A stretch of DNA of 63,037 nt, counting the filler, from Octopus bimaculoides (lineage: Eukaryota): the NCBI RefSeq assembly GCF_001194135.2. It is 4 parts of 4 records of this genome, joined end to end, with 100 filler letters (N's around TTAATTAATTAA, not from the genome) between each part and the next. Parts side by side here need not be neighbours in the genome. Positions count along the whole stretch, not along the records: positions 55,156 to 63,037 come from NC_069007.1; 3 more parts are not named here. One strand, written 5' to 3'. The notes below the pieces were generated by a model that saw only the letters and a program-made list of their open reading frames with translations, ran no database searches and had not been told where the DNA came from. This document shows positions 62,859 to 63,037 of this stretch, piece by piece; the stretch's first letter is position 1; each line of letters starts with the position of its first letter. Both the position numbers and the translations under genes were made by a program.

Positions 62859-62932
62859 TGGCCGGATAACTGAAGAGATGTCGGTGTGGGTTCCCACCCC
62901 TGCATCCGAAACTCGGAGTTTTATCATGGCTA
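62859..62932 (+). ncRNA. Type I hammerhead ribozyme (candidate, full core)
   Basis: Core CUGAAGA (62870-76) and GAAA (62908-11) with a G10.1-C11.1 pair. Stem I is 11 bp with a bulged A; stem II is GAUG/CAUC plus a hairpin; stem III is ACUC-G-GAGU. Cleavage triplet GUU at 62918-62920. Confidence 0.75.
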
Positions 62933-62959
62933 CCGAATAAGTGTTACATATATTTTTAC

Positions 62960-62993
<34 letters not shown>

Positions 62994-63037
62994 CGTGAGA
63001 GAGTTAGGAGTTGGGGGTTCAACCCACTAAGGGATAG

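What the first reader, a model, noticed from the sequence alone, without database searches (positions are those of the whole stretch)
62859..62932. Apparently complete type I hammerhead ribozyme (retrozyme/satellite-type self-cleaving RNA)
Seen in sequence: every conserved HHR core base is in register (C3-U4-G5-A6-A7-G8-A9 = 62870-76; G10.1 62877 / C11.1 62907; G12-A13-A14-A15.1 = 62908-11; U16.1 62919; U17 62920). Stem I pairs 62859-69 with 62921-32 over 11 bp (2 G-U, bulged A62926 five pairs from the core). Stem II is GAUG/CAUC with one extra C, capped by a GUGG/CCAC hairpin. Stem III is the palindrome ACUC-G-GAGU. Established: this long-stem-I/II, short-palindromic-stem-III type I layout is that of the Schistosoma Sm-alpha, newt satellite 2 and metazoan retrozyme HHRs, which yield small circular RNAs. 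Inference: this is a copy of a cephalopod retrozyme or Penelope-related family. I do not know of it being described at this locus.
Basis: partly seen in the sequence, partly recalled or inferred. Interest (0 to 1): 0.92.

Follow-up and report, generated by a model that had tools for sequence, protein, structure and literature searches.

The report
Lone hammerhead-like motif, unconfirmed ribozyme
The sequence does contain every conserved base and all three stems of a hammerhead self-cleaving RNA, far more than chance gives in one window, but no model, energy or context test supports an active ribozyme or a retrozyme, so it is most likely an ordinary, solitary and probably decayed relic of a ribozyme-carrying retroelement.

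Summary
At 62859-62932 (+) every conserved hammerhead base is in register (CUGAAGA / GAAAC / GUU), with an 11-bp helix I, a long imperfect helix II and the near-palindrome ACUCGGAGU as helix III. It finds none in 40 Mb of matched random sequence. Expected chance hits are about 1e-5 per 63-kb window and about 0.4 per 2.7-Gb genome.

Support stops there. No Rfam hammerhead model matches, even on 141 nt at E<=10 (below about 12 bits). A model built from three validated animal retrozyme hammerheads gives 7 bits, E=1.7. The hammerhead fold is 5-8 kcal/mol worse than the best fold alone and 11 kcal/mol worse in context. The stable helix II register puts an extra C into the core. There is no tandem unit, no second motif in 7.7 kb upstream, no Penelope-like ORF and no copy in any searchable collection.

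A SINE-type head lies 250 nt upstream and has a homologue at 58116-58195, but linkage to the motif is unproven.

Verdict: probably a genuine but solitary, blemished hammerhead relic (about 0.5); chance look-alike about 0.35. Known kind, modest interest.

The parts
62859..62869 (+). Helix I, 5' strand (UGGCCGGAUAA)
   Evidence: Pairs with 62921-62932 over 11 bp, 2 G-U. Pairing probability is high in the isolated 74-mer but about 0 in wider context.
62870..62876 (+). Core box C3-A9, CUGAAGA (N7 = A)
   Evidence: It matches the CUGANGA filter quoted.
62877..62907 (+). Helix II: G10.1-C11.1 (62877-62907), bulged C62906, AUG/CAU, G.U, two mismatches, distal hairpin GUGG/CCAC with loop GUUC (62890-62893)
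   Evidence: The thermodynamically preferred register is G62877-C62906, which leaves C62907 as an extra base between helix II and G12.
62908..62910 (+). Core G12 A13 A14
62911..62919 (+). Helix III, odd-length near-palindrome ACUCGGAGU (A15.1...U16.1)
   Evidence: The hairpin is essentially unstable (-0.1 kcal/mol). The self-duplex is -14.1 kcal/mol, like validated retrozyme hammerheads (-6 to -14.8), but with a central G.G. Validated examples are perfect even-length palindromes.
62920..62921 (+). U17 and predicted scissile bond (GUU|U) between 62920 and 62921
   Evidence: Position follows from the hammerhead numbering. GUU is allowed by the NUH/RUH rule but differs from the GUC and GUA of the validated examples. 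Cleavage was not tested.
62921..62932 (+). Helix I, 3' strand (UUAUCAUGGCUA) with bulged A62926
62822..62864 (+). Upstream competitor: CUUC 62822-25 pairs with core GAAG 62872-75, and CGGUCA 62832-37 pairs with UGGCCG 62859-64
   Evidence: MFE of 62800-62990 is -47.8 kcal/mol against -36.8 with the hammerhead forced.
62933..62961 (+). 29-nt stretch between the motif and the microsatellite
   Evidence: Sequence. It is comparable in length to the 30-40-bp PLE 'tail', but that is a resemblance only.
62962..62992 (.). (AT)15.5 microsatellite
   Evidence: TRF. Its adjacency is weak evidence, because 21% of non-N positions in the piece lie within 30 nt of a microsatellite.
62536..62615 (+). SINE-type tRNA-related head 250 nt upstream of the motif (context; linkage unproven)
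   Evidence: 72% identical over 82 nt to 58116-58195, blastn E=7e-8, 0/1000 shuffles. No Rfam tRNA or ARAGORN hit.
58116..58195 (+). Second copy of the same head (context)
   Evidence: Its 3' body is not significantly alignable to the motif region.

Best explanation
This is a solitary type I hammerhead motif with a complete catalytic centre. It is most likely a relic of a ribozyme-bearing non-autonomous retroelement: a Penelope-like-element 3' or pLTR fragment, or a retrozyme-type unit. It now sits alone beside an (AT)n tract. If transcribed by read-through, it would act as hammerheads do: G12 activates the 2'-OH of U62920, which attacks the 62920/62921 phosphodiester and leaves a 2',3'-cyclic phosphate and a 5'-OH. 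Helix III is a short near-palindrome that cannot form a stable hairpin, so efficient cleavage would need two copies pairing through helix III, as in dimeric hammerheads. No partner copy is present. This copy also carries an extra or bulged C at the base of helix II, a G.G in the would-be dimer helix III, a GUU triplet and strong competing folds. It is therefore probably weak or inactive. Shown here: the sequence features, their statistical rarity and the energetics. Inferred: ancestry, mechanism and present inactivity.
For: The core and three helices were verified base by base, including C15.2 and G16.2, against the field's filter CUGANGA/GAAAY/RUH. The candidate is the only descriptor hit in the piece. 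There were no hits in 40 Mb of random sequence, and about 1e-5 are expected per window. Real hammerheads occur at thousands to more than 100,000 copies in many animal genomes, mostly as single dispersed motifs from truncated PLEs. The helix III self-duplex (-14.1 kcal/mol) lies in the range of validated dimer-type retrozyme hammerheads. PLE-type hammerheads are known to have a long helix II, bulges, mispairing and small palindromic helices III, and to escape standard descriptors. Both blemishes are single-base length differences in CC and GG runs, in a draft assembly that is 18% N.
Against: No Rfam hammerhead family matches, even on 141 nt at E<=10, which is below about 12 bits. Model R1, built from validated animal retrozyme hammerheads, gives 7.0 bits, E=1.7, below a trivial hairpin. 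The hammerhead fold scores -17.6 or -21.0 kcal/mol against an MFE of -25.7 in isolation, with helix III probability 0.003. In context it is 11 kcal/mol worse than the MFE, and the competitor is upstream, so it would be transcribed first. No tandem unit or second motif was found, no PLE ORF and no target-site duplication. No related copy was obtainable, so there is no covariation evidence. About 0.4 chance hits of this quality are expected per large genome.
Confidence: 0.5

Rival explanations
1. It is a chance look-alike. The three-way junction and the core boxes arose fortuitously in diverged repeat DNA, and no ribozyme was ever encoded here.
For: Both covariance-model tests are negative. The hammerhead fold is strongly disfavoured. 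The preferred helix II register inserts a C into the core. Helix III has odd length, unlike all four validated examples. The GUU triplet is atypical. About 0.4 hits (helix I >= 11 bp) to about 36 hits (>= 5 bp) are expected per 2.7-Gb genome under a random model, and the number of windows the scan has read is unknown. At the same offset from its head, copy A reads CTAAAGG instead of CTGAAGA.
Against: About 1e-5 chance hits are expected per window, with 0 hits in 40 Mb. All of about 16 constrained positions are correct at once, together with an 11-bp helix I. The comparison with copy A is not statistically valid homology.
Confidence: 0.35
2. It is an active non-LTR retrozyme unit: one monomer of a tandem array whose transcripts self-cleave and are ligated into small circular RNAs.
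For: The topology is type I with a near-palindromic helix III and a dimer-competent helix III duplex. The possible unit 62691-62960 (270 bp) falls within the 170-400 nt size range. The piece ends 105 nt after the motif, so a downstream repeat cannot be excluded.
Against: No repeat of the unit and no second motif lie in the 7.7 kb upstream. Helices I and II are not the canonical 6 and 4 bp with loop-loop contacts. Models built on validated retrozyme hammerheads do not recognise it. The (AT)n tract and then a different, head-like sequence follow the unit.
Confidence: 0.08
3. The motif is a by-product of tRNA-derived SINE sequence. CUGAAGA would be a tRNA-Phe-type anticodon loop and the GUGG/CCAC hairpin a T arm or B box, so the region would be a degenerate tRNA-like head rather than a ribozyme.
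For: CUGAAGA equals the tRNA-Phe anticodon loop (established knowledge). GGGTTC-CCCAC resembles the B box of the two SINE heads in the piece. SINE heads are demonstrably present nearby.
Against: ARAGORN finds nothing. There is no Rfam tRNA match on 62820-62960 at E<=10. Alignment of 62835-62940 to either head is no better than shuffles (242 and 249 of 1000). No anticodon stem can be drawn from the sequence.
Confidence: 0.04

Closest known systems
Hammerhead variants of Penelope-like elements with a small palindromic helix III (Drosophila, rotifer, shrimp and mosquito types; Cervera & de la Pena 2014, PMC4209133)
   Same: Both have type I topology, a G10.1-C11.1 pair and a long helix II with a bulge. 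Both have a small palindromic helix III that implies dimeric action. Most are solitary dispersed copies, have low expected activity and are missed by standard descriptors.
   Different: [quoted passage not shown] Helix I is 11 bp rather than 2-5 bp. Helix III has odd length. No pLTR or RT-EN ORF is detectable.
Canonical type I hammerheads of animal non-LTR retrozymes (coral Amil224, mussel Mg353, axolotl Ax353/Ax330; PMC7229834)
   Same: They share the same catalytic centre CUGANGA/GAAAY/RUH, the C15.2-G16.2 pair, and a helix III that is palindromic and far more stable as a duplex than as a hairpin.
   Different: The validated examples have helix I of 6 bp and helix II of 4 bp with loop-loop contacts, perfect even-length palindromes, GUC or GUA triplets, and sit in tandem repeats. 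None of that holds here.
Schistosoma Sm-alpha, a SINE-like element that carries a hammerhead (Ferbeyre et al. 1998, cited in PMC4209133; its Pol III boxes are from my own knowledge)
   Same: A hammerhead motif lies within a few hundred bases downstream of a tRNA-related SINE-type head.
   Different: It is not shown that the head and the motif belong to one element. The bodies of the two head-bearing copies are not alignable. Five runs of four or more T lie between the head and the cleavage site, so Pol III would stop first.

Membership tests
Hammerhead ribozyme (motif level) | Conserved catalytic centre CUGANGA / GAAAY / RUH in register | tested here: met
   CUGAAGA 62870-76, GAAAC 62908-12, GUU 62918-20.
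Hammerhead ribozyme (motif level) | Three helices around the core, with helix I open (type I) | tested here: met
   Helix I is 11 bp, helix II has 11 pairs with 1 bulge and 2 mismatches, and helix III is 4 bp around one G.
Hammerhead ribozyme (motif level) | G10.1-C11.1 pair directly adjoining A9 and G12 | tested here: inconclusive
   This is possible only if C62906 bulges out (-17.6 kcal/mol). The more stable register pairs G62877 with C62906 and leaves C62907 inserted before G12 (-21.0 kcal/mol).
Hammerhead ribozyme (motif level) | Significant covariance-model match (Rfam Hammerhead_1 and relatives) | tested here: not met
   There is no hit at E<=10 on the whole piece or on 141 nt. E=8.4 corresponds to 12.5 bits at that size. 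My own model R1 gives 7.0 bits, E=1.7.
Hammerhead ribozyme (motif level) | Active fold thermodynamically accessible | tested here: not met
   The hammerhead fold is 4.7-8.1 kcal/mol above the MFE in isolation and 11 kcal/mol above it in context. Tertiary contacts and protein assistance are not modelled.
Hammerhead ribozyme (motif level) | Mg2+-dependent self-cleavage after N17 | not testable with these tools
   This needs in vitro transcription.
Animal non-LTR retrozyme | Head-to-tail tandem repeats of about 150-450 bp, each with a hammerhead | tested here: not met
   There is no repeat of the unit and no second motif upstream. Downstream, only 105 nt remain before the piece ends, and they hold (AT)n and a different sequence.
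Animal non-LTR retrozyme | Canonical helix I (6 bp) and helix II (4 bp) with loop 1-loop 2 tertiary contacts | tested here: not met
   The candidate has 11 bp and 13 positions instead.
Animal non-LTR retrozyme | Short palindromic helix III | tested here: inconclusive
   ACUCGGAGU is one base away from a perfect palindrome. The duplex is stable (-14.1 kcal/mol) but has a G.G.
Animal non-LTR retrozyme | [quoted passage not shown] | not testable with these tools
   No transcriptome data are available.
Penelope-like element hammerhead | Lies in a pLTR flanking an RT plus GIY-YIG ORF (or is a truncated copy of one) | tested here: not met
   Pfam finds nothing in 10 upstream and nearby ORF pieces. 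However, most genomic PLE hammerheads are solitary.
Penelope-like element hammerhead | Large helix II (6-8 bp) with G10.1-C11.1 | tested here: met
Penelope-like element hammerhead | [quoted passage not shown] | tested here: not met
   A9 (62876) is followed directly by G62877. The feature is as listed.
Penelope-like element hammerhead | Consensus families within the genome, full of compensatory changes | not testable with these tools
   No DNA of this organism could be reached.
Sm-alpha-type SINE with hammerhead | tRNA-related Pol III head and hammerhead within one element | tested here: inconclusive
   A head is present 250 nt upstream. Unity of the element is not shown. T-runs would stop Pol III first. 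No TSD was found.

The most novel reading that the evidence does not exclude
The head at 62536-62615 and the motif could belong to one roughly 425-bp element. That would be a tRNA-headed SINE family whose 3' module is a hammerhead borrowed from a Penelope-like element. It would be a Sm-alpha-like ribozyme SINE outside flatworms, and it would imply that PLEs mobilise tRNA-headed SINEs in this (probably cephalopod) lineage.
Probability: 0.12. Interest if true: 0.55.

Novelty: new member of a known kind. Interest (0 to 1): 0.3.

Why it matters
If genuine, it adds one more animal lineage to the long list of genomes that carry retroelement-associated hammerheads. The source is probably a cephalopod, for which the searchable literature holds no hammerhead report. 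It would also provide a variant with unusually long helices I and II. That is useful for cataloguing, and for testing how much bulging next to G10.1-C11.1 a hammerhead tolerates, but it does not open a new question. The practical lesson is methodological. A perfect core plus three helices can fail every covariance model, so both the descriptor hit and the model miss have to be weighed against family-level evidence, which is lacking here.

Tried and rejected
1. The Rfam scan of the piece and of a 141-nt stretch found no hammerhead. The many 'miRNA' rows are microsatellite artefacts, far below their gathering scores.

2. I used translated ORFs over the motif, the SINE head and a LINE-like tail as probes into the 5.8-billion-protein collection, hoping to reach genomic copies.

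3. Pattern scans found nothing useful. The family-specific hammerhead pattern gave 0 hits in metagenome contigs and 0 in viral contigs. The SINE-head pattern gave one metagenome hit, a 58%-GC bacterial coding contig and therefore chance, and 0 hits in prokaryote genomes and in viral contigs.

4. I tried to use copy A (58116-58612) as a sister copy. The heads are homologous, and a 29-nt block (CTAAAGG plus a GTGAG/CTCAC hairpin) lies on the same diagonal as the candidate's box (p about 0.03 given position). However, whole-body, chained and second-block alignments are no better than shuffles, so I rejected it as evidence in either direction.

5. The tRNA-like-head reading of the motif itself was rejected.

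6. The search for a PLE ORF found nothing, and no TSD was found.

7. (TA)n adjacency as a PLE insertion signature was discounted, because 21% of positions in the piece lie that close to a microsatellite.

8. Literature and supplement searches for a printed consensus of this repeat found nothing.

9. From memory, the head resembles an abundant octopus SINE. That is a lead only and could not be tested here.

10. Ax330 was left out of model R1 because MAFFT misplaced its GAAA box.

Full report
**Observation.**
The piece (55156-63037) is AT-rich draft sequence. It is 18% N and dense in (TA)n, (TG)n and (TATG)n tracts.
- The core is CUGAAGA (62870-76), G62877/C62907, GAAA (62908-11), U62919 and U62920.
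- Helix I has 11 pairs (two G-U) with a bulged A62926.
- Helix II is a G-C pair, a bulged C62906, AUG/CAU, a G.U, two mismatches and a GUGG/CCAC hairpin.
- Helix III is ACUC/GAGU around the single G62915.
- C15.2 and G16.2 also fit, so the motif passes the whole filter that the de la Pena laboratory uses, CUGANGA/GAAAY/RUH.

**Chance.**
- It hits only this site in the piece, on either strand, and nothing in 40 Mb of first-order Markov sequence modelled on the piece.
- In staged sampling over 120 Mb, the core plus helices II and III occurs at 1.6e-7 per base-strand, and P(helix I >= 11 bp with one bulge) is 5e-4.
- That gives about 1e-5 expected hits per 63-kb window and about 0.4 per 2.7-Gb genome. 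With helix I >= 5 bp the genome figure is about 36.
- The motif is therefore far beyond chance for one window. A large genome could still produce one such site by accident, and I do not know how many windows the scan has read.

**Model tests.**
- No hammerhead family of Rfam 15 matches at E<=10, either over the piece or over a 141-nt stretch.
- At that search size E=8.4 corresponds to 12.5 bits, so the candidate scores below about 12 bits.
- I then took experimentally validated animal retrozyme hammerheads from the supplement of PMC7229834. I aligned three that align cleanly and built a covariance model.
- With filters off, the model aligns the candidate in the expected register at 62862-62928. 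The score is only 7.0 bits, E=1.7, below a trivial hairpin.
- The model is weak because it rests on three sequences. PLE-type hammerheads are also known to escape standard descriptors. These negatives therefore lower the claim but do not kill it.

**Energetics.**
- In isolation the hammerhead secondary structure scores -17.6 kcal/mol (with G10.1-C11.1 next to G12 and C62906 bulged). It scores -21.0 in the register that pairs G62877 with C62906 and leaves C62907 inserted in the core. A rod-like MFE reaches -25.7. Helix III has pairing probability 0.003.
- In a 191-nt context, an upstream hairpin (62832-37 with 62859-64) and the pairing CUUC/GAAG (62822-25 with 62872-75) take the 5' strand of helix I and part of the core. 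Forcing the hammerhead costs 11 kcal/mol.
- Helix III is unstable as a hairpin (-0.1) but stable as a self-duplex (-14.1). That resembles the validated dimer-type examples (-6.0 to -14.8), except that its odd length puts a G.G in the middle.
- All four validated examples have perfect even-length palindromes.

**Context.**
- No unit containing the motif is repeated in the piece. The descriptor finds no second motif in the 7.7 kb upstream, and TRF finds only (AT)15.5 at 62962-92.
- Pfam finds no RT or GIY-YIG remnant in ten ORF pieces, and no target-site duplication flanks the region.
- Adjacency to (TA)n fits the PLE insertion preference. It carries little weight, because 21% of positions in this piece are equally close to a microsatellite.
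- A SINE-type, tRNA-related head lies 250 nt upstream (62536-62615). It has a clear homologue at 58116-58195 (72% identity, E=7e-8, 0/1000 shuffles). A possible third, partial head lies at 63009-33.
- I could not show that the motif belongs to the same element as the head. The bodies of the two copies are not alignable.
- One 29-nt block of copy A lies on the same diagonal and reads CTAAAGG with a GTGAG/CTCAC hairpin. It is only marginally better than chance (12/400) and does not survive the chained test (203/1000).
- Five T-runs of four or more bases, one of them at the cleavage site, would stop Pol III transcription from the head.

**Comparative data.**
No DNA from this organism could be reached.
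- The three protein-collection probes found nothing.
- Pattern scans of the metagenome, prokaryote-genome and viral collections gave nothing, or one chance bacterial hit.
- Covariation, copy number and family consensus are the decisive evidence, and all remain untested.
- The searchable literature has no report of a cephalopod hammerhead and prints no consensus for this repeat.

**Interpretation.**
Hammerheads occur at thousands to more than 100,000 copies in many animal genomes, mostly as single dispersed motifs derived from truncated PLEs. Set against a per-window chance rate of about 1e-5, a genuine but solitary and blemished hammerhead relic is the best single explanation. I put it at about 0.5. 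It would cleave after U62920 by the standard mechanism and would need a partner copy for helix III, which this locus lacks. A fortuitous look-alike remains a serious rival (about 0.35) because every independent test was negative or impossible. An active tandem retrozyme (about 0.08) and a tRNA-head origin of the motif (about 0.04) are unlikely.

**Comparison with known families.**
- The nearest match in architecture is the group of PLE hammerhead variants with a small palindromic helix III and a long, bulged helix II. The candidate lacks their extra base between positions 9 and 10.1, and its helix I is much longer.
- It shares its catalytic centre and helix III style with retrozyme hammerheads, but not their helix sizes or tandem setting.

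**Novelty.**
If real, this is a new member of a known kind, and the interest is modest.

Noticed in passing
58116-58195 and 62536-62615 (+); possibly 63009-63033: Two homologous SINE-type tRNA-related heads (72% identity over 82 nt, blastn E=7e-8, 0/1000 shuffles). Neither is recognised by ARAGORN or the Rfam tRNA model. A third, partial B-box-like segment lies at the edge of the piece (34/2000 shuffles). From memory, the head resembles an abundant octopus SINE; that was not tested.
   Followed up: partly
58757-59050 (+) and 59093-59144: One reading frame reads ...YVWQQDFASCHTNRTQ*WLSENFCNCFTPNIWPPNSPDCNTLDYHV*GAVEQETNK.... By eye this is the C-terminal DDE half of a Tc1/mariner-type transposase with in-frame stops. 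An 18-nt inverted repeat (59093-59110 / 59127-59144) follows it. Pfam did not confirm the reading on the separate pieces.
   Followed up: partly
60986-61258 (-): A 91-aa stop-free stretch ends ...FKKHLDKFLSEIP.... It looks like the C-terminal tail of a non-LTR retrotransposon ORF. It has no Pfam hit and no homologue in the protein collection.
   Followed up: partly
55413-55576, 57391-57533, 58588-58765, 61388-61732: Dozens of Rfam 'microRNA' matches (mir-297, mir-466, mir-5014, mir-3149 and others, 20-60 bits) all fall on (TA)n, (TG)n or (TATG)n microsatellites and are far below their gathering scores (81-119 bits). They are low-complexity artefacts, not genes.
   Followed up: yes
55572-56042, 58746-58755, 59202-60139: These are assembly gaps (N runs of 471, 10 and 938 bases). 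The long 'inverted repeats' I1-I4 from the repeat finder, and the X-filled ORFs, are artefacts of these runs.
   Followed up: yes
62878-62940 (+): An ATG sits on the first bases of helix II and opens a 20-codon ORF (MSVWVPTPASETRSFIMATE*). In the anole PLE PAc, the element's ORF starts at the start of stem II (PMC11167929). Here the ORF is too short to mean anything, so this is a curiosity only.
   Followed up: no
57683-57768 (+) and 60352-60885 (-): A (GAT)n/(GAC)n trinucleotide tract and an Asp-rich 177-aa ORF (a run of D/N residues). Both are low-complexity sequence with no sign of a real gene.
   Followed up: no
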